Virus record (IMG/VR): IMGVR_UViG_3300017786_003484
Coordinates: 1 to 64,000 of that record
Strand: one strand, 5' to 3'
Length of the DNA: 64,000 nt
Part shown: positions 17,901 through 40,040 of the stretch, in pieces
How the letters are laid out: every line of letters starts with the position of its first letter
Position numbering within the stretch: the first letter of the stretch is position 1
Notes under the pieces: model-generated
The model's database searches: none
What the model was told of the DNA's origin: nothing
Seen by the model: the letters and a program-made list of their open reading frames with translations, nothing else
Position numbers and translations under genes: made by a program

Positions 17901-20900
17901 ACATTGGTTTCAACTAAGTTGCCAACTCCTGCACTTGGTAACCAATTATTTTTCTTGACATAGTCTGGTGTTATATCTGATCGAGCTATGGTTTTAAAAT
18001 TAATATCTTTTGATCTTGATACCCATCTACTATCATTCTTTAGTATATCAATAATGTTATCGCTTCTAAAGTCAACATCATCTTCGCCTTCTTTAAAACG
18101 TATAATCTGTCTGGTACTTGTCATGTCTTCTGCTCTGACTTCTATTTCCCAAACACGTCTATTACCTAACTTTCCAAATTCTCCATCAGTAAATAACCAT
18201 TGTTCGTTAATTTCTAAATCCTGTAATGTTCCTGGAATGTCAATAGCTGAATTCCTAAACAAAGCGTCAATTGCTAGATTAGTTCCTGATGCTGAATTTA
18301 ATCCCTGTTTGTAAGCAAACTCAACCGATTCATCTGAAATGATTTCTTCTATAATTGATTTTTTAGAAGGTATAATATCTCCCTTACTAACGTCACTTAA
18401 GAATGTGTTAAACTGGCTCTTCTCTGAATCTCTTGACTTAACAATATCTGTTGCTAAACTTTCTAATCCAGGTAGTAATCCTGTATTTGTTACAATCACT
18501 CCTTGTGCAAATGGCTTTCCGTCCCAGCCTCTTGTTCTTCTAGCAACCATTTTTAGATTTTGTAATCTATACTGTAATTGGCTATTATTGATTACATCAC
18601 CAAATCTAGTAGAGTTATTAAAGAAGAATATATGATCATAACTTCTTAAAGAGAAGTCAATAAATGTAACTTGCTTTTTTGAAGTAATTTCTACAAGGTC
18701 TTGTTTTTCGTTATAATTTCTAGATATTAATAAGTCATTTGGTTGTGCTAATTTTCCGTCTGAAAATATAATCTTTCCTCGTCTAGTTAAATCATTGTCT
18801 AACTTGTCTAAATGTCCTAGTTGGTGTTCGTATAAAAATCCTTTAGAGTCAATTGGTCCACCTAACCAGTAAGTATCTGTTCCCCAATTTTCACCAATCC
18901 AGGTCATTGCATCTAATGCTACCTGTTCCCAATTACCAACAGTTCCTCTTGAATTTAATTTATCAAAAACTAAACCATTGCGTTCTTGTAATGCTTGCAC
19001 ACCTATAAAGAATTCGTACAATTCTTGTTTTGTCTCAAACTTGTGACCGTAAGGAATATTAATAACATCTGTTTCATGTTGTTTGTATAATATAAGAGTG
19101 TCAGTATCTGTTTCTACAGTTCTTTGAAATGTTCCACTTGTACCATCTTTAATTGGTAATACAGTAGTGAAGTATCGTTGTTCTGGGTCAAAACCATAAA
19201 CTCTAAAACCGTCATCTTCTCGTTCTAGTCTTACTGCACTATACCTTAAGTCGTTAGTACCAACTCCTGCATCTAATGTTAAGTTAAAATCTTCGTCTGG
19301 AACAAATGTTCCATCAGATACTTTTGCATGTGGCATTTTAAATCTAGCTTCTTGATTGCTAAATCCACCCATACCAAACATTAACACAACTCCTAGATTT
19401 TCTAGTTCATTAATTACTTCTGATCCTGGGAAGTTTAACTCTTTATTACTTTCAAAAAGTAATGCTCCAATACCAACTGTTGGTCTTAGTTGTACCCAAG
19501 GAACATCTGGAAAAATACTATACTGTCCTAAGGCTTCTGTTGTATTATTATTGTTTGTTACAACATAAGGATTAATTCCTTTTTCTACAAATTCGTTTAC
19601 AGTATTATTATTTCCAATTTTATCAAAGATCTGATGGTATGCTCCTGCAGAGCTTCTTGCCCATAAGTCTTCCCACACGCCATAACTACCAATTTCCCAA
19701 GGTGCTCCGGCGGCGTCTTCTGTTACAGTTATTCCTAACCAATCATTTGGATGTATAAGTTTAACGTCTGTTGTAACTGGAAAGCCGTTTGGATATTCTC
19801 TTCTAGAGCCATAATCATATACTGCAGGTGTTCCTGGTTCGCTTACAAGACCTGTTTCTAACGCTGATTCTAATGCAACACGCTGGGTTGGCTCTCCCCA
19901 TTGATAATGATGATCCCACCAGTCTGGTTTATTGCTAAAGTTTAATATTTCCCAAGGACGGCTATCAGGCTGATAAGTTCCAAACAGTCTAATGTACATT
20001 CCTCTCCAACTTTCGCCGTTGTAATTCCATGTCCACGGATCTGCAAAATCAAAATCTTGTGAACGGTCTCTGAAGTCAATATCGTTGGATTCAAACCACC
20101 TAACTTCAGCTAACGAACGTAGGCTGGTAATATCAGGATTACAATATAACCCTGAATTTTCTCTTAACGTGGCTCCTGGCAATTCTATACAGCTGACATA
20201 AATTCTTCTTTCTAATTCTAATATTAAGTAGTCTCTTGGATCAGGTGCCGAATAAATGTTATCTTGGTGGGCCATTACTTTACTGCCGTCATGTCTTAAA
20301 ATTAAGAATCGATCAAACATTCCCCATCGTTCTCTAATAAGTTCTGGCTTGGTTAGTCCTTTCAATCCTAGCTTAGTAGGACTTGCTGGTACTCCGCTCA
20401 ATAAAGGAGTTGCGGAACCTCTGTAATAAATTGCTACTATACTTCCTTCACTAACTGGATTTGAAAATATTACATTAGGAGTAGTATCAACACTATATCC
20501 TTCAATTTGTAATATATTATCAACATAAACATATACATGATCTGGATCATATTCGTCTTGGTTTAATATACTACTACCAATGTTAACTGCAAAAGTTGTT
20601 TCGCTAGTTCCTTGAACAGTATAGTTAACTTTAAGCATATTAGTAGTAGAGAAAACCATTCCACTTTCAGCATCTGTTGAATTTGTATTAACTTCAATGT
20701 TTAATTGATCTAACATTAAATCTAATATTTCTCTTGAATTTGATGTTGTTACTTCGTATGCATTATTAAAAGTTTCTACTAACTTAATAAAACGTCTATG
20801 CCATCTCCATGCATTCATACTTCTGTTAATAACTACTTCACCTAAATCAGGGTTTAATCTTTGTGTTGTCCACATTCCTCTCATTGCTGAAATGTCAGCA

Positions 20901-23830
20901 GTATAAGATCCATTTATTGAAGGAATTTGAAAACTATTACTCCAGTTTTCATTTCCTCTTGAGTTGGCTAATATATTTTTCTCAAATGATTCATTTAATA
21001 TTGAAGGAGTTACTCCGTTTACAAAAGAAATGTTTTGTGTTGGATTATATGCTAATCCAGGAATTGCTGTACAATGTTGACTCTTTACATCAGCATTGGT
21101 TACAAATTCTCCTTGGTGCATTATTTCAACAGATTTGTTATCTTCGTGTTCTTCTAATGTAATTGAAAAACCTGTGGCAAAATTATCTGCATCTCTACTA
21201 ACAGTTGGTGTCCAGCTTGTAATAAATCCATTAACTTTTACTTTTAAAGTTCTAGGATCATTTTTTGGTTCAATTATCATTAAAGGTACAGAGTAATAGT
21301 TTGGTCCAAACTTAGCAGTATAAAATCCAATATCTAATGCTGTATCTACTTTTATAATTCCTTGAGCATCTGCTGTACCTGATAGTACTAACGTATTACT
21401 ATCATCATATATGTTTACATCTGTTAACGCAGTAGTCTTTAATATTAAAGGTTCATTAGATCCTCCAACTATCATATTGTAAACTACATTTTTAAAATTG
21501 TCTGCATGTTGTACAAGAATGTTATCACCGTGTGGCACTATTACCCATTCATATGTTGGCCATGCACTCTTTGAAAATTCTATTCCGTTGACTATGTCTG
21601 TGCTATCAATTCTTAAACTAGCCCAGCTCTTTAATCTAAACCAAGCCTTAAGAACACCAGTACTCATTCCGTCATTAACACTTTGTGGTAATCCTGTAAC
21701 TACCGAATGTAATCGTCTAAAGTTAATTGGTCCTGGAACATCTGCATCTCTATCCCCAGAAGTTAAAAACTTTGTAGCATCTTGTAATGTATAGTTAAAC
21801 AATATATCTGCTGGTTTATTTTTAGAATTATTGTTTAATTCAACTGAAAAGTTACTGTTATCAAACGATAATCTAAATCCACTTTCTTTATCTGCAGAAC
21901 CACTTCCGTCTTTATACTCAATAATAGTTGAACTCTGTCTAGTTGGAACGTCACCAAGTTGTTCTGCCCATTTATCCAAAGGAACTTGGTTTCTATCATA
22001 TAGTCTCCATAAAGGTACATGCGTTCTGCTCAATCTTGTCTGCGCCGGGTATACAACTGATCCGTCTACCTTATATTCAAAGTATGCTTTTAACCCAGCT
22101 CTGATATACATAGACTGTCCATCTTTAGGTGTATCAATAATAAAGTGTGTGCATATTCCTTGACTGTTAGCTCTAAAGACAATTATTTTATTTTTGTAAG
22201 CACCGTCTCTCAACCATAATATATTTTCACCAAATAATCTTATACCTTGTCTTTGTCTTACTGCAATTAAGTTCAAGTCAGTGAGTGCAGTACGAGCTTT
22301 TTGATTTGTACTAAATGCTTGAGTTAGAAAATTTTCTATCGCTACTTCGTCGCCATTAATTAACGCCTGATAAATTAATTCATTACGAGCTTGTTCAGCA
22401 GATCCTAAGAACATATCTACTAATATTCTTATAATATCTAATCCAACATAATCATCTGGTTGCTGTGAAACTCCTTCTTCGTTTTCAGCTACTGCTCCAA
22501 TTCTTCCTTTAAAAGTAGTTCCGTGGTTAAAAGTTTCTAAACTATTCTCAAATTCAATAATAGGTCTTAGAGCAACGTCTTTATCTGAAACAATGTCTGA
22601 TTGTTTAATATTAAGAAAATTACAAGTTTCATTAATTGTGTCTTTATGAAGCCAAACATTTGATCTAGAGAATGCACTTCTATTTTCTGCACCAGATTCT
22701 TGTGTAACATAATGCTTTTGATTTATTCCTAGTATGTCGCCTTCCCATGATAGTTCGTCCCATGATAAATTAGTCTGATCCCACAATGATGTTAGTTCAG
22801 TACTATAAACTGTTTGTCTATCTTGGTGTGATTGAGATAATAACTTAATTCCAGAAGGAGTACCAACTCCAGAAACTTGAAAAACTCTTTGAGTGTTTAC
22901 TGAACCTACTTGTAAAATTTCATCAGCATTAACATAGTAATCGTTTAACGTGAGAATAACCTGAGATCCTACTGCTGGTATACTTGTTGCATTCCATATA
23001 ATGCTTTCTCCTACAAAATCAAAGTCGTTGTTTTGTCCAACAGTTTTAACAACTCCGTCAACTTCTACTACTACTTTTAAGAATTTACTAAATCCCCATT
23101 CTCCAGAAACCTCATTATAGAAATCTAATTGGTTGGTTCCGTCAGCAATATGTGATTCTGAAATTGTGCCGTTAATTGATTCTCTGCCATCTACTGTCTT
23201 TTTAAAACTAACTCTCATTCCATTTTTAAGAGATAGTGTTCTTCCGTTTGCTTGTAAAGGTGTTGTATAATATTGCTTTCCAATAATATCACTGAGAATA
23301 TTAATTGGAGCACTTGTATCTGAAATGATTGATCCAGTTAAATGTATAATTGGAACCTGAGGAGCAATCCACATATAGTTACTCCAGTTAATAAATTTAT
23401 CTGGGTTAATCGGAAAATCATTTACACTTACAGGAACCAAAGGTTCGTTGTCATGCTCGTCAAGAAAGCCTTGCGATAATGCAAGATTATCTGATGTTAA
23501 TGTGTAAACTTTATTATCATTTCTTCTAACAACTATTCCTTCTTCTAGTTGTCGTTTTTTATTATCTGCTGTAGGTAAAAAGTCATTGTTTGAAGAAGTT
23601 AATTGCCCTGAAGCCGCAGTTGGCCTGCCAATATTATAGTTTACATTTTCAATAACATTAGGTTGAAACATGTCTTCAACTGTTGCTGTAAATAACTTCT
23701 TATTAATATCTGTTTTAAAGATATCAGGTAAAAGATTTATTGCAAGAGGATCAACCTTCTCTACTTTCTTTTCATTGGTATATGTATTGCTTTCAATACT
23801 TTTACCATTAAACTTTTTAGCATTTGCCAT
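14918..23830 (-). CDS. Giant virion structural protein (2970 aa), probable baseplate wedge/fibre-anchoring protein
   Basis: Directly follows gp6-like gene; LLPDIFKTDINKKL, INPDKFINWSNY, RPIIEF and YIQEVKPYHTK blocks; Ig-like and CBM-like inserts. Confidence 0.7.
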   Translation of the reverse strand: MANAKKFNGKSIESNTYTNEKKVEKVDPLAINLLPDIFKTDINKKLFTATVEDMFQPNVIENVNYNIGRPTAASGQLTSSNNDFLPTADNKKRQLEEGIVVRRNDNKVYTLTSDNLALSQGFLDEHDNEPLVPVSVNDFPINPDKFINWSNYMWIAPQVPIIHLTGSIISDTSAPINILSDIIGKQYYTTPLQANGRTLSLKNGMRVSFKKTVDGRESINGTISESHIADGTNQLDFYNEVSGEWGFSKFLKVVVEVDGVVKTVGQNNDFDFVGESIIWNATSIPAVGSQVILTLNDYYVNADEILQVGSVNTQRVFQVSGVGTPSGIKLLSQSHQDRQTVYSTELTSLWDQTNLSWDELSWEGDILGINQKHYVTQESGAENRSAFSRSNVWLHKDTINETCNFLNIKQSDIVSDKDVALRPIIEFENSLETFNHGTTFKGRIGAVAENEEGVSQQPDDYVGLDIIRILVDMFLGSAEQARNELIYQALINGDEVAIENFLTQAFSTNQKARTALTDLNLIAVRQRQGIRLFGENILWLRDGAYKNKIIVFRANSQGICTHFIIDTPKDGQSMYIRAGLKAYFEYKVDGSVVYPAQTRLSRTHVPLWRLYDRNQVPLDKWAEQLGDVPTRQSSTIIEYKDGSGSADKESGFRLSFDNSNFSVELNNNSKNKPADILFNYTLQDATKFLTSGDRDADVPGPINFRRLHSVVTGLPQSVNDGMSTGVLKAWFRLKSWASLRIDSTDIVNGIEFSKSAWPTYEWVIVPHGDNILVQHADNFKNVVYNMIVGGSNEPLILKTTALTDVNIYDDSNTLVLSGTADAQGIIKVDTALDIGFYTAKFGPNYYSVPLMIIEPKNDPRTLKVKVNGFITSWTPTVSRDADNFATGFSITLEEHEDNKSVEIMHQGEFVTNADVKSQHCTAIPGLAYNPTQNISFVNGVTPSILNESFEKNILANSRGNENWSNSFQIPSINGSYTADISAMRGMWTTQRLNPDLGEVVINRSMNAWRWHRRFIKLVETFNNAYEVTTSNSREILDLMLDQLNIEVNTNSTDAESGMVFSTTNMLKVNYTVQGTSETTFAVNIGSSILNQDEYDPDHVYVYVDNILQIEGYSVDTTPNVIFSNPVSEGSIVAIYYRGSATPLLSGVPASPTKLGLKGLTKPELIRERWGMFDRFLILRHDGSKVMAHQDNIYSAPDPRDYLILELERRIYVSCIELPGATLRENSGLYCNPDITSLRSLAEVRWFESNDIDFRDRSQDFDFADPWTWNYNGESWRGMYIRLFGTYQPDSRPWEILNFSNKPDWWDHHYQWGEPTQRVALESALETGLVSEPGTPAVYDYGSRREYPNGFPVTTDVKLIHPNDWLGITVTEDAAGAPWEIGSYGVWEDLWARSSAGAYHQIFDKIGNNNTVNEFVEKGINPYVVTNNNNTTEALGQYSIFPDVPWVQLRPTVGIGALLFESNKELNFPGSEVINELENLGVVLMFGMGGFSNQEARFKMPHAKVSDGTFVPDEDFNLTLDAGVGTNDLRYSAVRLEREDDGFRVYGFDPEQRYFTTVLPIKDGTSGTFQRTVETDTDTLILYKQHETDVINIPYGHKFETKQELYEFFIGVQALQERNGLVFDKLNSRGTVGNWEQVALDAMTWIGENWGTDTYWLGGPIDSKGFLYEHQLGHLDKLDNDLTRRGKIIFSDGKLAQPNDLLISRNYNEKQDLVEITSKKQVTFIDFSLRSYDHIFFFNNSTRFGDVINNSQLQYRLQNLKMVARRTRGWDGKPFAQGVIVTNTGLLPGLESLATDIVKSRDSEKSQFNTFLSDVSKGDIIPSKKSIIEEIISDESVEFAYKQGLNSASGTNLAIDALFRNSAIDIPGTLQDLEINEQWLFTDGEFGKLGNRRVWEIEVRAEDMTSTRQIIRFKEGEDDVDFRSDNIIDILKNDSRWVSRSKDINFKTIARSDITPDYVKKNNWLPSAGVGNLVETNVQKRSVNELFGSNIGLFEDDKFERLDELRSFSKFGIYKEGDRVWNNGLLYQAIENVTGGQNTAFDSAQWTVVTEDAISLPPTVWLSDFNFKDFTTTETGETEVSWNILQGTVPALINEICPNGDPALEESKVTFANAHGLAVDDMLLILGTNEETIRTFHVVTKVIDAYNILIPTRVSTKTENLVSITMMNTKGKTTADLPTNLTNIAVGTKFYLEPDSTAQGEYTVYEFNGTAWIINEEATTLQGNMVDSTAIDSITLLDGDTGNKIANIELFDPYKGFTIDDVVQYLNYRQGADPAVYNIDEFGNEELDATTYWENTQIGKLWWDTSKLRYAEYEQRNNVEYRANYWGEQFADSEVEIYEWYSSDEEPAVDTHPDARIDYSDGDGIIRYTENQEYNNNGALVTKYYYWSKNPSDIPTEAKRIYSALAIQSALNSPDIAGITWASPIATNALVLSNANGFLASRKSVILRIVERTDGLQQHVNSLLVSEGKSGSVIPEYLFRRLKTSISGRDQYRRTHALKEWIPNTLYNEGDVVINYNLSQVVTTSTYNDNDVPVIKFLNDTREKVEGVLRPIYQIDEGTGNLVDSLGNIFALSTDTRLETKKKLHRPMLITNKTGYTSTSDFVADALSDWNMVVSGATAVQEAGGLNGEYLAVIPARRRVPDTKLHPLRRYGNQYVPLPQTWYKDIKEARRNFVYSANKYLLQANVVSKATYDAHLLTYQPLFGPYVKDLTPYWEFVDYLDTGYVVGSEQAFVDNLSEITTLSSDITIFGLLDSNGELERSFNKNGLDIELVFQRGGTIQFLDTVWDGSLGDAWDTARWDKFPWDEDGSEVLESLLTALREDLLVTNDIGFFNLFFFDMVKESLNQIPNSSWAIKSTYLDISKTSSDDLRGVSLFYDKLAEQVATYIQEVKPYHTKVANFNNKLSSNDTINVGITESLIMNIETEEFTVSIDDAVLTDEDGNTISFLNPDVSTSTLVEVDPNGASEVVPTI

Positions 23831-23835
23831 TTATG

Positions 23836-26800
23836 TTAAGCCCTTCTTGGTAACGGAACTTGTTCGGTTGTAATAATTTCAATATTATCTGCTGTAGCAC
23901 TACTAATAAACAACTCGTTTTCTTCGCATTTGATTTGAAATATATCACTAACCGATACTGTTGCTTGTACAGGTACTAAAGCTACACTTGAGACAACTCC
24001 AGCTAATTGCTGATGTATCCATGCCGCCATATCTGTAAAATAAAATGTTTCTCCAAAATCCCAGTTTTCAACTGAGAAATAATCGTTAATTGATGCAATT
24101 ACTCTACTTCTAACTTCTGCATTACTTACTTTAGTCCCGTCGCTTCTTGTTACTCTAATTGTTACTTGATCTCTAATGTTTGCATTTTCTCCAAATATAA
24201 TTTTATATTTTATTGGATGATATATTATAGTATCACTTACACTTTTATAAGGAGTAATGCTAGACATAAAGTCACTAAGTTCAGTTGACGTCATTGTAGT
24301 TGGAACCTCGTCAAATTCTGTTCCGGTTGCTAACCAATTTCTAAAATTAGAATCATATTCGTCTGTTAATACAAACATATCAATAATATTAGTAGTTGTT
24401 GCATCTACTCTGTTTTCCCTTAAAGGAACATGATTATGTTGTATTGTTAGGCTTTGCCTTCCAGTAACTGTTTTTGAAGGAGTTGTAATATCGTTTATAG
24501 CTCTTGGTGCTAAAGTGAACTGACCTTCTGCATCATCAAATTCTTTCTCTACTAGCTCAATAGTTTGCGATACTCCTTGTACTGTAAATATTAAACTAAA
24601 CAAGTTAGGATTTTTAGGAATTAAATCATCACTGATTCCCGGAAGTTGTACAATAACTCTCTTAGGATCATACCTACCATCATCAAGTGTAAAGTAATCC
24701 GATACTTCTAGTTCTGCTCTCCTTGTAACACCTGGATTGTTTGCGGCACTACTTGAAAGTACTTGTACTGTATCTTGGATAACTCTTCTAGTTACAGAAT
24801 CCAATGCTTGTCCAAATTTTTGATTGTGAAAAACTATTTGTGATTCACTACCTAGTACTACAATATCTCTTCTTGTAGTTGCTGTCCAAGTATTACTATC
24901 ATTGCTATGAGTAAAACGTAGTAACCAACTTGTACCAACAGTAGATGAATCAAAATTTCCTTCAGTGACTATTTCATCTGCGTTAATAATCTTCCAATCA
25001 TCTAATACATGATCGTAACGTAAACCAAAGTTTCGTTGTGCTTGTAATTCATCTAAGATGTTTCTTTTTTCGCCATCTGTAAATACAACACGAAGATTAG
25101 GCATCCAGGACACTACGTCTTGGTTTGCAGAAATTCCTTCAATAAACACAGCTCCTTCACCGTTTGCTCTTTTTCCTGTGTTAACACCGTCTGATGATGT
25201 TAATCCAAATCCATCTCTGAAAACATCTTGTATCTTGTACCAGCCTAAATCGGCTAGTCTAACTAAAGAATTTTTCTTTAATGTTCTTATATCTTGTTCT
25301 ACTGAACTTCTTCCAATTCTTTTAGGATCAACATTGCCTGTAAAGTATCCATGTGTTGATCCAATTGTAGTATCTACTGTTTTCCAATAAACTGGGTTTG
25401 CAGGTGAGATAGGTGTAAATCTTCTGTAGTATAACTGATGTAAAGGACGATACTGTAGTGTATCTAATAACCATTTCATAATTTTGTTTGTTCCAACTGA
25501 GTCAGCTATTTTTGTGTCTACAGTTGATTCGTCAGTATATAAAAATGCATCATCTGCCAATGTAATAACTGGTCTATAAGATGCTGTTGGATCAGCTAAA
25601 TCTGAGTACAGGCTTTGTCCTGTGTGTATTCTGTTTATAGATTTTATTCTAGATATACCAGACACTTTACCTTGAGGATAATTATTATAATCATCTGCTG
25701 TAATCATTCTATTTTGACTAGCGGCGGTTCTGCTTGCATTATTTTTAATGTCGGTAATAGACTCACTCTCAATGCCAGCCATGTTATTTTTAGGACTAAT
25801 ATTACAAACTATTTCTTGAGGCTGTCCTAAAGAATCTACATAAACTAAATTTAAATCTACATCAGTAGTTTCGCCTTTTTGTATAATAAAGTCTTCGTTA
25901 GCACTAACTCTAAACCAAATTCTAATATTACCAAATGGTACATTACCAAATGATCCATTGCCAAATTTAATTGATATCTGGTCGTTAGTTCTAGTAATTA
26001 TTTCAAAGATATTTCTATCTTCTTTATCAATATCATTAAAAGATATGTTGTTACCAACAACACTTTCAACCTTTGTCCAATATGTTAATATTGTGCCTGT
26101 CTGGTCCACAGTTTGTACCCATACATCAGTATCATTGATATTATTTGCATTAATATCAATTACTCTGTTTTCTACAACATTATCAATAATAATATCCTGA
26201 AACTGAAGTGTTCCTTGCTTACAACTAAAGAACCAACCATTTGATTCACCAGCAAATCCTGTTCCGTCATTATTAAAAGTAAGACTCTTTGCATTTAACG
26301 GAGATGGTGGGCTTTCAATTAATGCTCCGTCTTCTAGTGTTACTGGAATAATATCAAACGTATATGATTGTCCTGCTCTACTATTCAATGAAACATTTTC
26401 TATCAAGCTAGAATCATCTGTTTCTTCAAACTCATAAATTTCTCTAGTCATTGCTCCTGACTGAAATGTACTAATTGGTCTTCCGATAGGATTACTTTTA
26501 CTAAATGCTTCGTTTAATATTAAGTTAAATTGTTCTTGAAAATCACTGTTTAGCGGATCTGCCCATACAATATTTTGACCTGCTAGGTTGACTCCTCTAC
26601 TATCGTATATTTCTTGAGAACTTGAAATACTGTTAATTCTTAAAAAACCTTCAGCAGTTTTATTTCTATGTGGCTTGTATCCTATTTGTCTAGCAATAGA
26701 TAATACGTTTTCTCTTACTTCAGCAGTTTCTAAGAATGTTTCTCTTAAATTTAAATCTGCTCTGAATGCTATGTTTTGTCCGAGGAATGAAATTAAATCA

Positions 26801-26994
26801 ACTAATGCAACATATTCACTGCTATTAATAAAGTCATTAAAATCTTCTCCGTAATTAACCTGGATATGATCTAGTAGTGCTTCTCTTAATGATTCAAAAT
26901 CATATGCTTTAAAATCTGCATTGACTAAATCTCTATAACTATTAAGCCAGCTCTCTGCGGCGTTTAACTGACTTAGACGCTTTGTCTGACTCAT
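23836..26994 (-). CDS. Baseplate wedge subunit, T4 gp6-like
   Basis: DFKAYDFESLRE, ETFLETAE..ENVL..ARQIGYKP, IKFGNGSFGNVP, ESITDIK, QNRMITADDY. Confidence 0.85.
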   Translation of the reverse strand: MSQTKRLSQLNAAESWLNSYRDLVNADFKAYDFESLREALLDHIQVNYGEDFNDFINSSEYVALVDLISFLGQNIAFRADLNLRETFLETAEVRENVLSIARQIGYKPHRNKTAEGFLRINSISSSQEIYDSRGVNLAGQNIVWADPLNSDFQEQFNLILNEAFSKSNPIGRPISTFQSGAMTREIYEFEETDDSSLIENVSLNSRAGQSYTFDIIPVTLEDGALIESPPSPLNAKSLTFNNDGTGFAGESNGWFFSCKQGTLQFQDIIIDNVVENRVIDINANNINDTDVWVQTVDQTGTILTYWTKVESVVGNNISFNDIDKEDRNIFEIITRTNDQISIKFGNGSFGNVPFGNIRIWFRVSANEDFIIQKGETTDVDLNLVYVDSLGQPQEIVCNISPKNNMAGIESESITDIKNNASRTAASQNRMITADDYNNYPQGKVSGISRIKSINRIHTGQSLYSDLADPTASYRPVITLADDAFLYTDESTVDTKIADSVGTNKIMKWLLDTLQYRPLHQLYYRRFTPISPANPVYWKTVDTTIGSTHGYFTGNVDPKRIGRSSVEQDIRTLKKNSLVRLADLGWYKIQDVFRDGFGLTSSDGVNTGKRANGEGAVFIEGISANQDVVSWMPNLRVVFTDGEKRNILDELQAQRNFGLRYDHVLDDWKIINADEIVTEGNFDSSTVGTSWLLRFTHSNDSNTWTATTRRDIVVLGSESQIVFHNQKFGQALDSVTRRVIQDTVQVLSSSAANNPGVTRRAELEVSDYFTLDDGRYDPKRVIVQLPGISDDLIPKNPNLFSLIFTVQGVSQTIELVEKEFDDAEGQFTLAPRAINDITTPSKTVTGRQSLTIQHNHVPLRENRVDATTTNIIDMFVLTDEYDSNFRNWLATGTEFDEVPTTMTSTELSDFMSSITPYKSVSDTIIYHPIKYKIIFGENANIRDQVTIRVTRSDGTKVSNAEVRSRVIASINDYFSVENWDFGETFYFTDMAAWIHQQLAGVVSSVALVPVQATVSVSDIFQIKCEENELFISSATADNIEIITTEQVPLPRRA

Positions 26995-32575: not shown

Positions 32576-33226
32576 TTATGTTAGCCTCCTGCTAAAAATA
32601 CTAAGGATCTTTTTCTGTAAACCTTCGTCTGCGTTTGGGTATAGATCTTTTACAATTCTTTCTTGTTCCTCTGTACTTCCGCTTGCAAACATACTTCTAA
32701 TCTCTGATGCACTTCCTGCTGTTTGCCCTGCAACTGTAAACTTATAATCTTTAACAGGATATATGTACCCATGTCCAGGGCGTTCTGTTCCTTCACCTTT
32801 GTCGTTTGTAAAAGGTTTCATCTTACCACCTGTGTACTTTTGAAAATAAGAAGGCGAACCATTTTTTAATGGTGTGAACTGAAATCTAGGATCTTCTTGC
32901 ATATCCTTTGATCCTACTCCAAATACCATAACATCTGTGTTAGGATCAAGACCTAATGCAGTTGGTAATATCTTTGGATTATAAGGAACCGGTTCTTCAA
33001 TAACCTGGCTTGGATTAATACCCGTTGCTTGTATCATTGCTTTTTTCTCGTCAAAAGAAAAAGGACTCTTATTCGGCTCTACTTTGCCGCTAGAAGCGAT
33101 ATAAGTATTGTTAATGCCAAACTTAGACGCTAGTTCTTTATATGCAGAAGCATGTCCATGATGGAACGGATGAAACCTTCCACCATAAATGGCAATTACT
33201 TGGGGTTGCAAATCACTAATTTTCAT
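32576..33226 (-). CDS. HxGH-superfamily nucleotidyltransferase (cytidyltransferase-like)
   Basis: IYGGRFHPFHHGH, PFSFDEK, SASEIR. Confidence 0.8.
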   Translation of the reverse strand: MKISDLQPQVIAIYGGRFHPFHHGHASAYKELASKFGINNTYIASSGKVEPNKSPFSFDEKKAMIQATGINPSQVIEEPVPYNPKILPTALGLDPNTDVMVFGVGSKDMQEDPRFQFTPLKNGSPSYFQKYTGGKMKPFTNDKGEGTERPGHGYIYPVKDYKFTVAGQTAGSASEIRSMFASGSTEEQERIVKDLYPNADEGLQKKILSIFSRRLT

Positions 33227-35872: not shown

Positions 35873-37638
35873 TTATATTCAAGAATATTACAATAAAAAA
35901 CTTTATGAGTGTTGGTAATGTTACTCAGGCATTAAACTTAGACAAAGATGGTTTGACTCTTGTACTAGGAAATAACTTAGATTTAGGTGGCGATGGAGCT
36001 CGTAATGGTGTTGGTAAAACAACTATTGTTAATGCTTTGTCTTTTGCACTTTATGGTGATGCATTAACTACAATCCGTAAACATAACCTAATTAACAAAA
36101 CTAATGGCAAGAATATGCTTGTTACATTAGAGTTTGAAAAGAACGGCGAAAAGTTTAAAATTGAACGTGGACGTAGTCCAAATGTCTTACATTTTTATAT
36201 TAACGATAGTAAGTTAGGTGATGTAACAGATGAAGGACAAGGCGAAAATAGAGTTACACAAAAAGAAATAGATAGGCTTATTGGCATGGGCAAAGAAATG
36301 TTCAAACACCTTGTTGCATTGAACACTTATACACAACCTTTCTTATCTTTACGGGCCAATGAACAACGAGAAATTATTGAAGAACTTCTCGGTATTACAC
36401 AACTTAGTGAAAAAGCTGACATACTTAAAGAAGGTATTAGAAATACTAAGGATCTGGTTAAAGATGAAGAATCAAGGCATCGTGCATTAGAAGAAAGTAA
36501 TGCTAGAGTTAAGTCTACTATTGACGATTTAAAAAGACGTAGCAGGACATGGGCTAAGAAAAAAGATGCTGACTTAACTAATTTGTTGGCTGGTATTACA
36601 GAGTTAGAATCAACAGATATTGATGCAGAACTTGCATCTCACAGGGCATTAGAAGTTTTTAAAGAAAACGATAATCGCCTAAAGTTAGCCAATAAAGAAC
36701 TTGCTTCTAGACAGAGTAATATTAATAAACTTAAGGAATCTTTTAAATTATCTGAAAATAATTTAGTATCTTTAAAGGATAATAAGTGCCATACTTGTGG
36801 TACTAAGTTACAAGACGAAAAGCAAAAAACTTTAATAACAGAATCTAACAATATGCTAAATCAGATTAAAGATGCTCTTAAAGAAGAACATGGTCTTTTA
36901 GCACAAGCAGATATTGCTGTTCGAGATATTGGAGATATGGGTACAAGACCTAGTACAAAATATTTGAATATTGAAGAAGCAATTAAACACCAGAGTAATT
37001 TAGAAAACTTAAAAAGTACTCTGGTAAACAAGGAAGGAGAGGCAGATCCTTACCAGGAGCAAATAGAAGCTCTTGAAACTACTGCCCTTGCAGAAATATC
37101 ATGGGAGAACATGAATGAGTATACAAAACTGCAAGAACACCAAGAATTTTTGTTAAAATTGCTTACTAACAAGGACTCATTTGTCCGTAAACGCATTATC
37201 GAGCAGAATTTAGCATATTTGAACCACAGACTAGGTTATTACTTGGATAAGTTACAATTACCACATGAAGTGGAATTTAAAAGCGACTTAGAGGTTGACA
37301 TTACTCAATTGGGTCAAACATTTGATTTTGACAACCTAAGCAGGGGAGAACGTAACAGGTTAATCTTAGCTCTAAGTTGGAGTTTTAGAGATGTGTATGA
37401 GAGTTTCACAGAACCTATGAATTTATTGTTTATTGATGAATTAGTAGACTCAGGCATGGACCAAGTTGGTATTGAGTTATCAATGAGTGTCTTAAAGAAA
37501 ATGGGCCGTGAAATGAAACGTAATGTCTTTTTAATCAGCCATCGAGACGAACTCGCTGGTCGTGTAAACAACGTACTAATGGTTGTTAAGCAAAATGGTT
37601 TTACCGAGCTTGACAATTCTACTGAAATTATTTTATAA
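35869..37638 (+). CDS. Recombination ATPase, T4 gp46/SbcC/Rad50-like
   Basis: Walker A NGVGKTT, zinc hook CHTC, signature LSRGE, Walker B LFIDE, ISH. Confidence 0.93.
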   Translation: MIIFKNITIKNFMSVGNVTQALNLDKDGLTLVLGNNLDLGGDGARNGVGKTTIVNALSFALYGDALTTIRKHNLINKTNGKNMLVTLEFEKNGEKFKIERGRSPNVLHFYINDSKLGDVTDEGQGENRVTQKEIDRLIGMGKEMFKHLVALNTYTQPFLSLRANEQREIIEELLGITQLSEKADILKEGIRNTKDLVKDEESRHRALEESNARVKSTIDDLKRRSRTWAKKKDADLTNLLAGITELESTDIDAELASHRALEVFKENDNRLKLANKELASRQSNINKLKESFKLSENNLVSLKDNKCHTCGTKLQDEKQKTLITESNNMLNQIKDALKEEHGLLAQADIAVRDIGDMGTRPSTKYLNIEEAIKHQSNLENLKSTLVNKEGEADPYQEQIEALETTALAEISWENMNEYTKLQEHQEFLLKLLTNKDSFVRKRIIEQNLAYLNHRLGYYLDKLQLPHEVEFKSDLEVDITQLGQTFDFDNLSRGERNRLILALSWSFRDVYESFTEPMNLLFIDELVDSGMDQVGIELSMSVLKKMGREMKRNVFLISHRDELAGRVNNVLMVVKQNGFTELDNSTEIIL

Positions 37639-37648
37639 GGAGAATAAT

Positions 37649-37843
37649 ATGACAGACCCAAGAGATTCAGCTCACCATATAGCACTAATGGAAAATATGG
37701 ATACTTATATGGCAGAGAACAGAAAGTTTGTAGAAAAGGGAGTTAAGGCTTCTGCAACTAGAGCTCGTAAAGCTCTTCAGGCTATTGCTGTTGCTGTTAA
37801 AGAAAGACGTAAAGAAATCACAGAAGAGAAAAACGCACTTTAA
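37649..37843 (+). CDS. Histone H1-like (Hc1-type) small basic protein
   Basis: KFVEKGVKASATRARKAL...RKEI; AAGGAG RBS before ATG 37649. Confidence 0.65.
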   Translation: MTDPRDSAHHIALMENMDTYMAENRKFVEKGVKASATRARKALQAIAVAVKERRKEITEEKNAL

Positions 37844-38355
37844 TGCCAAGTAAAAGTAAAACTAAAGGATCAAGTTTTGAGAGGGAGGTTGCAACACATC
37901 TCTCAGAAATTTACAACGAAAGTTTTGTAAGAGTTCCAAACTCAGGAGCTTTTGTTGGAGGAATGAATCAGGCTCGTAAAAGCTATCTAAGTGAAGAACA
38001 AATTAGAGGCTTTAAAGGAGATATTATTCCTGGTCCTAGTTTTCCTTTATTGGTATTTGAATGCAAATTTTATGCAGACTTTCCTTTCCATCAGTTACTT
38101 CAAAATACGGACGTACTGATATTAGATGACTGGATAAATCAAACTATAGACTGTATGGATGATGGCGACTTAGGACTTCTTTGTATGAAGTTTAATAGAA
38201 AAGGTCGTTATGTTGCATACGAGGACAAGTTTAAATTTAAGACAACAAGATCTATAAACTATAAAAATTGGCTCATAACAGAATACGATTCCTTTTGGGA
38301 ATTGAATGTAGAACAAGTAAAAACATACTCAAAACTCACAGAGACCATCTCTTAG
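37843..38355 (+). CDS. Holliday junction resolvase (PD-(D/E)xK, Hjc-like)
   Basis: SKTKGSSFERE, SGA, GDII, FECK. Confidence 0.75.
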   Translation: MPSKSKTKGSSFEREVATHLSEIYNESFVRVPNSGAFVGGMNQARKSYLSEEQIRGFKGDIIPGPSFPLLVFECKFYADFPFHQLLQNTDVLILDDWINQTIDCMDDGDLGLLCMKFNRKGRYVAYEDKFKFKTTRSINYKNWLITEYDSFWELNVEQVKTYSKLTETIS

Positions 38356-38359
38356 ACAC

Positions 38360-38890
38360 ATTGGCAAGCTATCTACTGATAGGTTAGTGCAAGCCGTTTA
38401 TATTGCACCCATAAAATCTGGATCAATTAAGGATCGCAGAGGACGGAAGTTCTGAGCAGTAGCAGAGACATATCACCACTATCCTTGACAGGACGTAGTT
38501 CAAACAGCATGAAACTGGACTGGTGTATGTATAGTATTGCTAAAATGAGTAGGCTCTGGTGAACTATTACAACCTACATAACAATAGAATTGGTTTGGTT
38601 TGGTTCTATTTGTTTGCGTTATTACAGTCTAGTGTAAAAGGGTACCGCGTAACCGCCCTAACAGAAATGTTGCTTTAACCAAAGTGTGGTAGAGGTCTGT
38701 GTCAAGACAACCATTTATCTTAGCCCCTAAACGGGGCTAAGTGTGGATAGTTAATCTATGTCAAGCTAAACTTAAAAATATTAGAGTCAAACTTATATAA
38801 TAAAAACTATGTGTTATCGTTTGAAATATAAAATTGAATGAGTAGAGCAACGCGATACGATATTCATGGACGAAGTATTCGTCCTGTAAC
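38360..38890 (+). ncRNA. Candidate large structured non-coding element (ncRNA or origin); strand tentative
   Basis: Largest ORF-free gap in the window, packed with at least 9 helices including a GAAA tetraloop and a 9-bp perfect stem. Confidence 0.45.
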
Positions 38891-38922
38891 TGATTCTTAA
38901 CAATGTTAATGAGCAACTCTGG

Positions 38923-39150
38923 CTAACGCATCTGATTAGCAATACCCTTTTTACCATACATTGTATCTATCTTCTCTTTAACTACTTCTGATAAGATTAC
39001 TCTGTCAGTATATGGCATATCCCATACAACTTGTATAGGGTTGCTACTCCAAACACTTAAATTACATATATCTTGGGTTAGGGCTCTTGACTCAGATTCA
39101 AAACTTTCGATATACTTTGTAATCTTATTTGAATCAGTTCCTAGACTCAA
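38923..39150 (-). CDS. gp51-like small protein; likely -1 frameshift extension of the upstream gene
   Basis: VWDMPYTDRVIL motif; only a TTG start overlapping the upstream stop; frame is open back to a T8 run. Confidence 0.6.
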   Translation of the reverse strand: MSLGTDSNKITKYIESFESESRALTQDICNLSVWSSNPIQVVWDMPYTDRVILSEVVKEKIDTMYGKKGIANQMR

Positions 39151-40040
39151 GAGCCTTCGGAAAAAAAACTTGTTGGATCAAAAAGCATATCTGTTTTGTA
39201 TTCTTCTTGGCAAAAATCACATTTAGCTGAAACTTCTCTGATAATTCCAAATTCTTGGAATGCTTTTAATTCTTCTTCTAACCTATCAACTGAGCCTCTG
39301 TCGAGGTTACCCAACCAGTCAGCAATAAATTTTATATCAGTTATTTCTTGTGGTTCTGCTTCTCCGGTACCTGGGATAACAACTTTAAGAATTGCGCCAA
39401 TCATTAAGTCATGACTTAGATCAACTAATTGAGCAAAGCCTGCATTTGCAATTTCAGTTTGTCTTTCTACTGGTTCTTCTCGTTGTTCACTTGACTGTAA
39501 TGCCCTCATCGAATCAAATTGCATTCGTAGTAAACGTGATTGATCTTTTAAATTATACGGTCTTAGATGTACTTCTAAGTTATTTGCAAGTTTCACGATG
39601 CCTAATTTAGCTGGAATTGGCTTTAATGTACCAATTATCTGTCCTAAACTTACATTTATTCGTTGAGACTTACCATCAGACTCGTTACAGCCATGACTGA
39701 TATCCATTGGCATATCGTCTCCGTAACTTGCCATTTTAATTGCAACTAAAATCATATCAACATCTGCTGACGGAACTTCATCAACATCAGCAATGTCTGG
39801 ACAAGAACTTTTGATTACACCTCTCATTGCTTCACCGTTAAATAAAGCGTCAGGGTTTTTAAGGCGTAATTCGTCTTTTGCAGTCATTGGATATATTGCA
39901 AGTTCCCCGCTTTCAGTTAACTTAGGTGGCTGTTTATAGTATCTTCCATTAGAAGGAAGAGTAATATATGTTCCAGGTTGCCTAAAATAATCCGATAAAG
40001 GGTTAGCAGTTTGCCCGGAAAGTGGGTTTTTATTATCCAT
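39147..40040 (-). CDS. Baseplate hub/tail assembly chaperone, T4 gp26-like
   Basis: ITLPSNGRYY, PMTAKDE, DVDMILVAIK..SYG, C-terminal CDFC...DPTSFF. Confidence 0.75.
   Translation of the reverse strand: MDNKNPLSGQTANPLSDYFRQPGTYITLPSNGRYYKQPPKLTESGELAIYPMTAKDELRLKNPDALFNGEAMRGVIKSSCPDIADVDEVPSADVDMILVAIKMASYGDDMPMDISHGCNESDGKSQRINVSLGQIIGTLKPIPAKLGIVKLANNLEVHLRPYNLKDQSRLLRMQFDSMRALQSSEQREEPVERQTEIANAGFAQLVDLSHDLMIGAILKVVIPGTGEAEPQEITDIKFIADWLGNLDRGSVDRLEEELKAFQEFGIIREVSAKCDFCQEEYKTDMLFDPTSFFSEGS
39161..39168 (-). other. Slippery sequence T TTT TTT (-1 frameshift site)
   Basis: Minus strand AGT TTT TTT TCC GAA GGC TCT TGA; -1 frame reads TTT TTC CGA AGG CTC TTG AGT... into the downstream ORF. 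Confidence 0.6.

What the first reader, a model, noticed from the sequence alone, without database searches (positions are those of the whole stretch)
38356..38922. Candidate large structured ncRNA (or structured origin) between the resolvase and gp26-like genes
Seen: a ~570-bp ORF-free gap in a window where genes usually abut or overlap, dense with helices. Pairings: GTGCAA 38387-92/TTGCAC 38403-08; ACATATCACCA 38468-78/TGGTGTATGT 38521-30 enclosing TCCT-TGAC-AGGA; GTAGG 38549-53/CCTAC 38573-77; AACAATAGAA 38580-89/TTCTATTTGTT 38604-14; AGGGT 38639-43/GCCCT 38655-59; AACA-GAAA-TGTT 38660-71 (GNRA tetraloop); CTTAGCCCC-TAAAC-GGGGCTAAG 38719-41; GGACGAA-GTA-TTCGTCC 38868-84. Inference: G-U pairs, bulges and a GNRA loop on the plus strand suggest a multi-domain RNA rather than simple terminators. 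I could not match it to tRNA, tmRNA, RNase P or group I/II intron consensus, so it may be an undescribed phage RNA.
Basis: partly seen in the sequence, partly recalled or inferred. Interest (0 to 1): 0.8.

Follow-up and report, generated by a model that had tools for sequence, protein, structure and literature searches.

The report
Large pseudoknotted RNA gene in phage
The gene-free gap holds a real, roughly 515-base, intricately folded non-coding RNA; its first third is the catalogued 'Polynucleobacter-1' motif of unknown function, and the whole RNA is conserved in well over a hundred sampled giant T4-like phage contigs from natural waters and in Polynucleobacter chromosomes.

Summary
Window 38373-38890 (+ strand) is one non-coding RNA gene that fills the gap between a small nuclease gene and the convergent baseplate genes. 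Its 5' third (38382-38530) is a full-length member of Rfam RF01718, Polynucleobacter-1 (91.6 bits, threshold 37), a 141-nt motif described in 2010 with no known function. So it is not wholly undescribed. What appears to be new: the motif is only the 5' domain of a much larger RNA. A 3' core of about 235 nt, a variable linker and a terminal two-hairpin motif are colinear and conserved in 66 plus 61 phage contigs and in 11 of 13 bacterial loci, mostly Polynucleobacter. G-U pairs outnumber A-C mismatches five to one, which places the RNA on the + strand. In phages it starts a median 11 nt after a catalytic-domain-only nuclease gene. In bacteria it sits in genomic islands beside a 188-aa tyrosine recombinase. 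Function is unknown. My best guess is a trans-acting structural or catalytic RNA of mobile elements. A role as RNA partner of the adjacent DNA-cutting enzyme is the most novel reading not excluded. An origin of replication is not supported.

The parts
38373..38890 (+). Whole non-coding RNA gene (about 515 nt): 5' domain, 3' core, linker, terminal motif
   Evidence: All blocks are colinear and conserved in phage and bacterial copies. The 5' limit is set by the covarying Pa strand. The 3' limit is set by hairpin H2. The ends are inferred, not mapped.
38373..38378 (+). Pa 5' strand (CUACUG), pairing with CAGUAG at 38457-62 in the loop of P3: a pseudoknot that locks the 5' end
   Evidence: The pairing covaries across lineages, e.g. 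AACGG/CCGUU, UACAG/CUGUA, UUCAG/CUGAA, AGCAG/CUGCU, CUGCCA/UGGCAG, ACUACCGA/GCGGUAGC.
38382..38530 (+). 5' domain = Rfam RF01718 Polynucleobacter-1 (P1, P2, P3, P4, P4a, P4b; small pseudoknot 38382-84/38393-95)
   Evidence: cmscan gives 91.6 bits against a gathering score of 37, E 3.9e-20, model positions 1-141 of 141. Helices covary.
38531..38766 (+). 3' core domain, absent from the Rfam model: PK2 strand 38538-41 (pairs with P4b loop 38506-09), P5, P5b, P6, the P7/Px/P7b/P8 knot, P9, P10, P11
   Evidence: 68-76% identical and colinear in distant contigs. Covariation. Retained even where the 5' domain is replaced. No Rfam match up to E = 10 apart from one chance-level hit (psbNH, 12.7 bits against a gathering score of 45, E 4.4, - strand, 38721-41).
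38594..38600 (+). PK3: loop of P6 pairs with 38677-38683 (7 bp, long-range pseudoknot)
   Evidence: Different but complementary sequences in each lineage (UUCAACUA/UAGUUGAA, AUUGGUUU/AAACCAAU, CCACUUA/UAAGUGG, GCACUUC/GAAGUGC). Duplex energy of cognate partners is -7.95 against -3.05 kcal/mol for non-cognate partners.
38616..38656 (+). P7 (38616-22 with 38649-56), which crosses Px (about 38631-34/38671-74) and P7b (38639-41/38657-59)
   Evidence: 97.4% paired, 3 of 7 pairs covary, 0 of 500 shuffles reach the score. This helix was not in the model used to align. P7b pair 38640/38658: AU 44, GC 41, 100% canonical.
38719..38741 (+). P10, a 9-bp hairpin with no U-tract after it: a structural helix, not a terminator
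   Evidence: 8 pairs are 97-100% canonical with several pair types. The terminator scan finds nothing here.
38767..38832 (+). Variable A+T-rich linker (GC 0.23); length 25-100 nt in relatives
   Evidence: Conservation collapses here and indels appear. Several marine lineages carry a C(UUCG)G hairpin in it. No guide-like match elsewhere in the window.
38835..38866 (+). Terminal motif H1: helix 38835-39/38862-66, internal loop GA/GA(U), distal stem 38842-48/38852-58 (a GC[GNNA]GC mini-hairpin in most relatives)
   Evidence: A strict descriptor finds it in 79 of 108 unique downstream segments against 1 of 108 shuffled. There are 21 different complementary H1 combinations.
38868..38884 (+). H2: 7-bp hairpin with a GUA loop, probable 3' end or terminator of the RNA (possibly bidirectional)
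   Evidence: Present after H1 in all 79 descriptor matches, with varying stem sequence. The U-tail is weak in the window and clearer in some lineages. The consensus terminator scan does not call it.
37843..38355 (+). Context: 170-aa PDDEXK_15 nuclease gene immediately upstream (17 nt before the RNA)
   Evidence: Pfam PF24608, E 6.9e-24. Other clades carry a 142-aa SegE_GIY-YIG nuclease in the same slot. Metatranscriptome contigs bridge the junction between coding sequence and RNA.
38923..39150 (-). Context: convergent 75-aa ORF, followed by the gp26 baseplate hub gene (39147-40040)
   Evidence: Conserved in syntenic contigs.

Best explanation
Window 38373-38890 (+) is a single gene for a non-coding RNA of about 515 nt. 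Shown: its 5' third is a bona fide Polynucleobacter-1 (RF01718) element. It continues into a conserved 3' core, a variable linker and a terminal two-hairpin motif. The fold is held together by at least five pseudoknot or long-range pairings (Pa, PK1, PK2, PK3, P7). It is on the + strand. In phages it begins a median 11 nt after a small nuclease gene on the same strand, and RNA-library contigs run from that gene into it. The same RNA occurs in Polynucleobacter genomic islands, downstream of a divergently transcribed gene. Inferred: it is made as the 3' part of the nuclease transcript (or from its own promoter in bacteria), ends at hairpin H2, folds into a compact globular particle, and acts in trans as a structural or catalytic RNA (an RNP core or RNA-only machine) that mobile elements bring into cells of this host range. 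On this view it does not control a neighbouring gene. I put about 0.95 on 'one large structured + strand RNA gene whose 5' part is RF01718' and about 0.4 on the trans-acting mode of action. The cellular target is unknown.
For: Rfam match. Colinear conservation of all blocks in 66 IMG/VR contigs found by DNA pattern, in 61 of 80 contigs found through the GIY-YIG gene, and in 11 of the 13 bacterial loci found by the pattern; of the other two, L077 diverges after the 5' domain and L081 is cut off. The RNA is conserved where gp26 has fallen to 32% identity. Covariation: 94.5% paired against 71.1% shuffled, 25 of 30 pairs with changes on both sides; P7 pseudoknot; Pa; PK3 and P6, cognate against non-cognate. 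G-U 263 against A-C 55. All 61 copies are on the strand of the nuclease gene, starting a median 11 nt after it. Contigs 38096-38689, 38200-38540 and 38017-38447 in three RNA libraries. The next downstream ORF of at least 80 aa within about 900 nt lies on the opposite strand in 32 loci and on the same strand in 18, so there is no constant regulated target. The 5' domain can be exchanged while the 3' core and terminal motif stay. The bacterial copies lie downstream of a divergently transcribed gene.
Against: No experiment shows a discrete stable RNA. Metatranscriptome depth over the RNA (3-6) is no higher than over flanking genes, and nothing covers 38694-38930. The data are low-depth contigs without strand, and DNA carry-over cannot be excluded. 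No promoter was found in phages, and none was mapped or scanned for in the bacterial copies. H2 lacks a good U-tract in the window. Constant adjacency to a nuclease or recombinase gene could mean a dedicated partnership or cis role instead. No protein partner, target or catalytic activity is known.
Confidence: 0.5

Rival explanations
1. RNA partner of the adjacent DNA-cutting enzyme. The RNA binds the neighbouring catalytic-domain-only protein (142-aa GIY-YIG, 170-aa PDDEXK or 188-aa tyrosine recombinase) and supplies targeting, activation or inhibition, in the way omega-RNA (formerly HEARO), tracrRNA or bridge RNA serve their proteins.
For: The RNA starts a median 11 nt after the nuclease ORF, always on the same strand. 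Three unrelated small enzymes lacking the DNA-binding domains of their longer relatives neighbour it in different lineages. The GIY-YIG protein is 71-80% identical across clades, more conserved than gp46 or gp26. Weinberg 2010 had already noted the same upstream gene family.
Against: The GIY-YIG gene is widespread without the RNA: 420 cultured phage records carry it; in Melnitz, the only one examined for the RNA, the 148-nt gap after the gene gives no profile hit; and about 11 of 80 close homologues are followed directly by another ORF. No homologue of the bacterial recombinase or of DUF6641 was found in the window or in the phage loci fetched (L009-L074). No terminal variable guide segment was found, and the variable linker has no significant match in the window. 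The two nuclease types in one slot can be explained as non-orthologous replacement of a phage junction-resolving enzyme (inference).
Confidence: 0.15
2. Cis-acting mRNA element: a long structured 3' UTR (in phage) or leader (in bacteria) that controls the stability, termination or translation of the neighbouring gene, possibly with the 5' domain as a ligand-sensing aptamer. This was the original 2010 suggestion.
For: Apparently co-transcribed with the upstream gene. The 2010 table marks it as probably cis-regulatory with 'switch?' left open. In bacteria it lies about 350-400 nt upstream of the co-oriented recombinase gene, with a hairpin between them. The 5' domain is exchangeable, as sensor domains are.
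Against: In phages it lies after, not before, its only constant neighbour. The next downstream ORF is on the opposite strand in 32 of 50 loci. About 515 nt with five pseudoknots is far beyond known 3' stabilisers or attenuators. No expression platform with alternative pairings was seen. The upstream gene can be exchanged for an unrelated one without change in the RNA.
Confidence: 0.15
3. Self-processing ribozyme: the pseudoknotted 5' domain cleaves the transcript at or near its own 5' end and so releases the RNA from the nuclease mRNA.
For: No promoter motif stands out by eye upstream of the phage copies (only the window was scanned), although the 5' boundary is sharply conserved and locked in a pseudoknot. 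The dense pseudoknots and invariant junction nucleotides are ribozyme-like.
Against: No match to any ribozyme family in Rfam up to E = 10. Contigs in three RNA libraries span the putative site uncut. Bacterial copies probably start at their own promoter.
Confidence: 0.1
4. DNA-level element: a replication origin (R-loop or unwinding element, as in T4 oriF or ColE1 RNA II), a packaging signal or a recombination site.
For: An A+T-rich stretch (GC 0.23) follows the structured part. Recombination and repair genes lie nearby. In T4, oriF lies near genes 25/26 (my own knowledge).
Against: The GC-skew sign change is at about 33 kb, not here. Transcription is convergent, not divergent, at this site. 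Helices keep G-U but not A-C (263 against 55), which only an RNA of the + strand explains. Pseudoknots and loop-loop pairings make no sense as duplex DNA. The A+T-rich stretch is the least conserved part.
Confidence: 0.03

Closest known systems
Rfam RF01718, Polynucleobacter-1 RNA motif (Weinberg et al. 2010, PMC2864571)
   Same: Window 38382-38530 matches the whole 141-position model at 91.6 bits. Relatives score 67-120 bits. The habitats match (marine, estuary and fresh water, plus Polynucleobacter), and so does the upstream gene family noted in 2010.
   Different: The family as described has 141 nt, 16 members, none in any sequenced phage, and a tentative cis-regulatory label. Here it is the 5' third of an RNA of about 515 nt, with an extra 5' strand (Pa), a 3' core, a terminal motif and several pseudoknots. 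It sits at a fixed position in well over a hundred T4-like phage contigs. Sixteen relatives keep the 3' part but replace the Rfam domain.
HEARO / omega-RNA of IscB and TnpB, and other nuclease-adjacent guide RNAs
   Same: A large structured RNA directly abutting the ORF of a small nuclease in mobile elements. HEARO too was first catalogued as an orphan motif by the same laboratory (the alignment file is listed).
   Different: No sequence or Rfam relationship. The neighbouring enzymes are GIY-YIG, PDDEXK or tyrosine recombinase, not RuvC or HNH. No guide segment was identified. The nuclease often occurs without the RNA.
GOLLD and ROOL: large ornate RNAs of phages and prophages with unknown function
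   Same: Several hundred nucleotides, many conserved helices and pseudoknots, carried by phages and mobile elements, no known function (comparison from my own knowledge).
   Different: No homology (no Rfam hit). Smaller. Not next to tRNA genes (none in the window). Multimer formation was not tested.
ColE1 RNA II and the T4 oriF/oriG primer transcripts
   Same: A long transcript followed by an A+T-rich stretch, near recombination genes.
   Different: No skew or divergent-transcription signature of an origin. The A+T-rich part is unconserved. The conserved features are those of an RNA tertiary fold.

Membership tests
Rfam RF01718 Polynucleobacter-1 | Covariance-model score at or above the curated gathering score (37 bits) over the full model | tested here: met
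   91.6 bits, E 3.9e-20, model positions 1-141 of 141, window 38382-38530 +
Rfam RF01718 Polynucleobacter-1 | The model's helices (P1, P2, P3, P4 with two inner hairpins) are kept by compensatory change | tested here: met
   Pair counts. Cognate against non-cognate duplex energies for P1, P2, P3, P4, P4b.
Rfam RF01718 Polynucleobacter-1 | Lies downstream of the GOS11034-type gene (Weinberg 2010 supplement) | tested here: inconclusive
   Not in the window, where a PDDEXK_15 gene occupies the slot. In all other phage clades a SegE_GIY-YIG gene precedes it. That this gene is GOS11034 is my inference.
Intrinsic (Rho-independent) terminator, for hairpins 38719-41 and 38868-84 | G+C-rich hairpin directly followed by a U-tract | tested here: not met
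   The consensus scan calls neither hairpin. No U-run follows P10. After H2 the tail is UGUAACUG in the window; some relatives have UUU(C/A)UU. H2 may still mark the 3' end.
tRNA / tmRNA | Detected by ARAGORN | tested here: not met
   No gene found in 64 kb
RNase P RNA, group I/II introns, known ribozymes and riboswitches, 6S, GOLLD, ROOL, HEARO | Match to the Rfam covariance model | tested here: not met
   Only RF01718 reaches its threshold in the window. A relaxed scan of 38200-39100 up to E = 10 gives only chance-level hits. The RNA does not interrupt a gene.
Guide RNA of an RNA-guided nuclease or recombinase (omega-RNA / bridge-RNA type) | Obligate co-occurrence of RNA and effector gene | tested here: not met
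   The RNA always has a small nuclease or recombinase gene nearby. The GIY-YIG gene, however, occurs without the RNA in Melnitz and in about 11 of 80 close homologues; cyanophage records were not checked for the RNA here.
Guide RNA of an RNA-guided nuclease or recombinase (omega-RNA / bridge-RNA type) | A hypervariable unpaired segment complementary to a DNA target | tested here: inconclusive
   The only hypervariable part is the internal linker. Its best match in the window is 15 nt, reached by 7 of 200 shuffles. Host genomes could not be searched.
Replication origin | Cumulative GC-skew extremum or divergent transcription at the site | tested here: not met
   The skew changes sign at about 32-34 kb, and the site lies between convergent genes.
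Cis-regulatory leader or riboswitch | Constant position upstream of a co-oriented regulated gene | tested here: not met
   Convergent in the window. In 50 further loci the next downstream ORF is on the opposite strand in 32 and on the same strand in 18. Met only in the bacterial loci.

The most novel reading that the evidence does not exclude
The RNA is the nucleic-acid subunit of a new kind of RNA-dependent DNA enzyme. A common 3' core with exchangeable 5' domains would recruit, target or gate catalytic-domain-only proteins encoded beside it: a GIY-YIG or PDDEXK nuclease in phages and a 188-aa tyrosine recombinase in Polynucleobacter islands. This would repeat the history of HEARO, which was catalogued as an orphan motif and later found to be the guide RNA of IscB.
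Probability: 0.1. Interest if true: 0.9.

Novelty: new member of a known kind. Interest (0 to 1): 0.55.

Why it matters
Large bacterial and phage RNAs with ribozyme-grade architecture and no known function are few (OLE, GOLLD, ROOL, raiA; HEARO until recently), and each one solved has revealed new biochemistry. This work moves an obscure 141-nt orphan motif into that group. The RNA is about 515 nt long with at least five pseudoknot or long-range pairings. It has a modular 5' domain and a fixed place next to small DNA-cutting enzymes, and it occurs in a whole lineage of uncultured jumbo T4-like phages. Chromosomal copies in culturable Polynucleobacter isolates make its function testable for the first time. 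The work also shows that the Rfam model is truncated and should be rebuilt. If the RNA proves to work with the adjacent nuclease or recombinase, it would be a new class of RNA-dependent DNA enzyme.

Tried and rejected
1. tRNA or tmRNA: none.
2. Other Rfam families, including a relaxed scan: nothing beyond RF01718.
3. DNA similarity to GenBank phages: none.
4. Promoter and terminator consensus scan: counts no higher than in shuffles, and nothing convincing in the gap.
5. Single-sequence folding energy: weak, and it does not tell the strands apart.
6. RNAalifold on a mixed phage and bacterial MAFFT alignment: recovered only part of the structure because variable helices were out of register. A strict column-pair scan failed for the same reason. 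I replaced these with cognate against non-cognate duplex energies and a covariance-model alignment.
7. Bacterial neighbours as defence genes: no PADLOC hit. DUF6641 stays uncharacterised: no PDB relative and only a faint MobI lead.
8. Homologues of the bacterial neighbours in the window and the phage loci held at that point: none.
9. Similarity between the GIY-YIG protein and the PDDEXK or DUF6641 proteins: none.
10. Linker as a guide: no significant target in the window.
11. Proteins downstream of the RNA in marine lineages: no PHROG hit.
12. Literature search for an RNA-associated GIY-YIG system: nothing relevant. The only paper naming the motif is Weinberg 2010.
13. A 3'-core DNA pattern for a further collection scan was designed but not run: recall was only 74 of 131 and about 200 chance hits were expected.
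14. The metagenome collection was not scanned.

Full report
**Setting.** The window is part of an uncultured jumbo T4-like myophage. One contig that shares the locus at 100% identity is 244 kb long. The genes around the finding are gp47 and gp46 (SbcCD-like), an Hc1 histone-like protein and a 170-aa PDDEXK_15 nuclease, all on the + strand and ending at 38355. Opposite them, on the - strand, are a 75-aa ORF (38923-39150) and the gp26 baseplate hub. The portal gene lies further on. The nearest cultured relatives by portal protein are Atu_ph07, PA5oct and Phosso, at about 50% identity. The same DNA occurs in marine, estuary and seawater metagenomes. The gap therefore lies between convergent genes.

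**What the gap is.** Infernal against Rfam 15 gives one hit above threshold in the whole window. It is RF01718, Polynucleobacter-1 RNA, at 38382-38530 on the + strand: 91.6 bits against a gathering score of 37, covering the full model. ARAGORN finds nothing.

Weinberg et al. described this motif in 2010 from 16 sequences. They noted that most copies lie downstream of one gene family with a possible cyanophage homologue, and that none had been found in a sequenced phage. Its function is unknown.

**The RNA is much longer than the Rfam model.**
- In close relatives, 38356 to about 38752 is nearly invariant and better conserved than the flanking coding sequence. Conservation then collapses in an A+T-rich stretch and returns around the hairpin at 38868-84.
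- An exact-pattern scan for the motif core found 66 IMG/VR contigs and 13 bacterial contigs. The bacterial ones are mostly Polynucleobacter and include two isolates and one complete Oxalobacteraceae chromosome.
- In nearly all of them the 230 nt after the Rfam part are colinear and 68-76% identical to the window. A second conserved block lies at about 38833-38886.
- All 66 phage contigs show the same local gene order as far as each contig extends. gp26 identity falls to 32% while the RNA stays recognisable.
- Starting from the upstream gene of the other clades, a further 61 of 80 contigs carry the RNA, many of them far more divergent (52-60% identical to the window). At least 560 IMG/VR contigs encode that gene.

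**Structure.** In window coordinates the helices are:

| Helix | Strands |
|---|---|
| Pa | 38373-78 / 38457-62 |
| PK1 | 38382-84 / 38393-95 |
| P1 | 38387-91 / 38404-08 |
| P2 | 38418-24 / 38432-39 |
| P3 | 38451-54 / 38463-66 |
| P4 | 38469-77 / 38522-29 |
| P4a | 38482-84 / 38491-93 |
| P4b | 38497-501 / 38517-21 |
| PK2 | 38506-09 / 38538-41 |
| P5 | 38549-53 / 38573-77 |
| P5b | 38557-59 / 38569-71 |
| P6 | 38580-89 / 38604-14 |
| PK3 | 38594-600 / 38677-83 |
| P7 | 38616-22 / 38649-56 |
| Px | about 38631-34 / 38671-74 |
| P7b | 38639-41 / 38657-59 |
| P8 | 38660-63 / 38668-71 |
| P10 | 38719-27 / 38733-41 |
| P9 and P11 | tentative |

Evidence for these pairings:
- A covariance model of 38545-38676 was aligned to 63 phage and bacterial copies. 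94.5% of cells are paired against 71.1% in shuffles (0 of 500). 25 of 30 pairs change on both sides. The covariation score is 0.644, against 0.212 in shuffles and 0.05-0.14 for slid partners.
- P7 was not part of that model, and it crosses Px and P7b. It is 97.4% paired with three covarying pairs.
- In a sequence-only profile alignment of 94 distinct copies, the pair 38640/38658 is AU 44 and GC 41, with no exception.
- Where helix length varies I compared duplex energies of each sequence's own two strands with those of strands taken from other sequences:

| Helix | Cognate (kcal/mol) | Non-cognate (kcal/mol) |
|---|---|---|
| P6 | -10.1 | -3.3 |
| PK3 | -7.95 | -3.05 |
| P1 | -7.3 | -3.2 |

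- Pa is invariant in the first set of sequences, but it covaries freely in the divergent set.
- G-U pairs outnumber A-C mismatches 263 to 55, so the folded molecule is the + strand transcript.
- PK1 and PK2 are supported more weakly.

**The 3' end.** After a linker of 25-100 nt comes a two-hairpin motif. The first hairpin (H1) has a helix, a GA/GAA internal loop and a GC[GNNA]GC tip, which in the window is extended into a longer stem. After two or three nucleotides comes a 7-9-bp hairpin, H2. A strict descriptor finds this motif in 79 of 108 distinct downstream segments and in 1 of 108 shuffled ones. H1 occurs in 21 different complementary versions. It has a usable U-tail in some lineages but not in the window. 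Taking the RNA to end there is an inference.

**Context.**
- In every non-window phage clade the preceding gene is a 141-142-aa SegE_GIY-YIG catalytic domain (E about 1e-32), 71-80% identical across clades. The window clade has the unrelated PDDEXK_15 protein in the same slot.
- The RNA begins a median 11 nt after that ORF, and all 61 copies are on its strand.
- The coupling is not obligatory. About 11 of the 80 homologues are followed directly by another ORF. The cultured phage Melnitz has the gene (52% identity) but no RNA.
- In bacteria the RNA lies between a divergent DUF6641 gene and, 350-400 nt downstream, a 188-aa tyrosine recombinase made of the catalytic domain only. Full-length integrases lie a few kb away, so the setting is a genomic island. 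No defence-system match was found.
- The next ORF downstream of the phage RNA is on the opposite strand in 32 loci and on the same strand in 18.
- Sixteen loci keep the 3' core and terminal motif behind a different 5' domain that has no Rfam match in the four examples scanned.

**Expression.** Four metatranscriptomes hold contigs over the flanking genes at depth 2-9. Three of them have a contig running from the nuclease gene into the RNA (38096-38689, 38200-38540, 38017-38447). None covers 38694-38930. This fits co-transcription and an RNA that is not hugely abundant. The data are unstranded and low-depth, and they may include DNA.

**Interpretation.** It is shown that this is one large, conserved, + strand RNA with a knotted fold. 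Its function is not shown. The compact architecture, the invariant junction nucleotides, the exchangeable 5' domain and the lack of a constant downstream target make a trans-acting structural or catalytic RNA of mobile elements the best fit (about 0.4). A partnership with the adjacent enzyme comes next, then a cis role on the neighbouring mRNA, then self-processing. An origin of replication is not supported: the GC-skew sign change lies at about 33 kb.

**Novelty.** The window copy is a new member of a known, function-less family. The full-length architecture, the pseudoknots, the phage lineage and the bacterial island context do not appear in the one paper that names the motif or in Rfam.

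Noticed in passing
window 37843-38355 versus L009:331-759 and equivalents: The same genomic slot (after the Hc1-like gene, before the RNA) holds two unrelated small nucleases: PDDEXK_15 in the window clade and SegE_GIY-YIG in all other clades. This looks like non-orthologous replacement. The GIY-YIG protein is among the most conserved proteins of the lineage (71-80% identity).
   Followed up: partly
L096, L097, L099, L101, L109, L111, L131, L133, L134, L140, L143, L144, L149, L157, L160, L161: Sixteen phage loci carry the 3' core and terminal motif behind a different 5' domain of about 120 nt. It has its own covarying hairpins, and the four examples scanned (L096, L097, L099, L101) have no Rfam match. 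In a few of these loci another gene separates the RNA from the GIY-YIG gene.
   Followed up: partly
window 38701-38706 and 38760-38765: The hexamer G-N-CAAG occurs twice, each time at the 3' side of a small hairpin. The N changes in parallel in both copies between lineages (U/U in most, A/A in L011, L016 and L017). This suggests that both copies contact a common partner.
   Followed up: no
L087, L078, L084, L082, L075 (about 20 nt after the RNA's last hairpin): Polynucleobacter loci share a further conserved block (GGGGTATAGGTAGAAAATCACCACCC, then a second block) between the RNA and the 188-aa recombinase gene. It could be more RNA or the recombinase's site.
   Followed up: no
window 37583-37843 (+): A chlamydial-type histone H1-like (Hc1, PF07432) gene sits in a T4-like phage. 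It is conserved at this position in all syntenic contigs that extend far enough upstream.
   Followed up: no
window about 32.5-33.4 kb: The GC and AT skew change sign where transcription diverges (216-aa ORF on the - strand ending at 33226, 322-aa ORF on the + strand from 33330). This is the only skew turning point in the first 60 kb of the window; a second sign change in the last 2 kb follows the minus-strand ORFs there.
   Followed up: no
window 14918-23830 (-) and 23836-26994 (-): Two very long ORFs (2970 aa and 1052 aa) that were not examined.
   Followed up: no
window 38272-38308 (+): A sub-threshold Rfam hit to CRISPR-DR63 (30.1 bits, gathering score 37). It is an 8-bp hairpin inside the end of the PDDEXK coding sequence. 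There is no repeat array, so it is probably chance.
   Followed up: no
L128, L104, L114, L163, L092, L135 (linker between the 3' core and the terminal motif): Several marine lineages have a short C(UUCG)G tetraloop hairpin in the otherwise unconserved linker. This is a typical RNA feature and suggests that the linker is transcribed.
   Followed up: no
L168 (Methylophilales phage Melnitz, MZ577097.1 27452-33844): In this cultured phage the GIY-YIG homologue follows the ribonucleotide reductase genes and is annotated as hypothetical. In many cyanophage records the homologue is annotated as 'NAD synthetase', which looks like a propagated mis-annotation.
   Followed up: no
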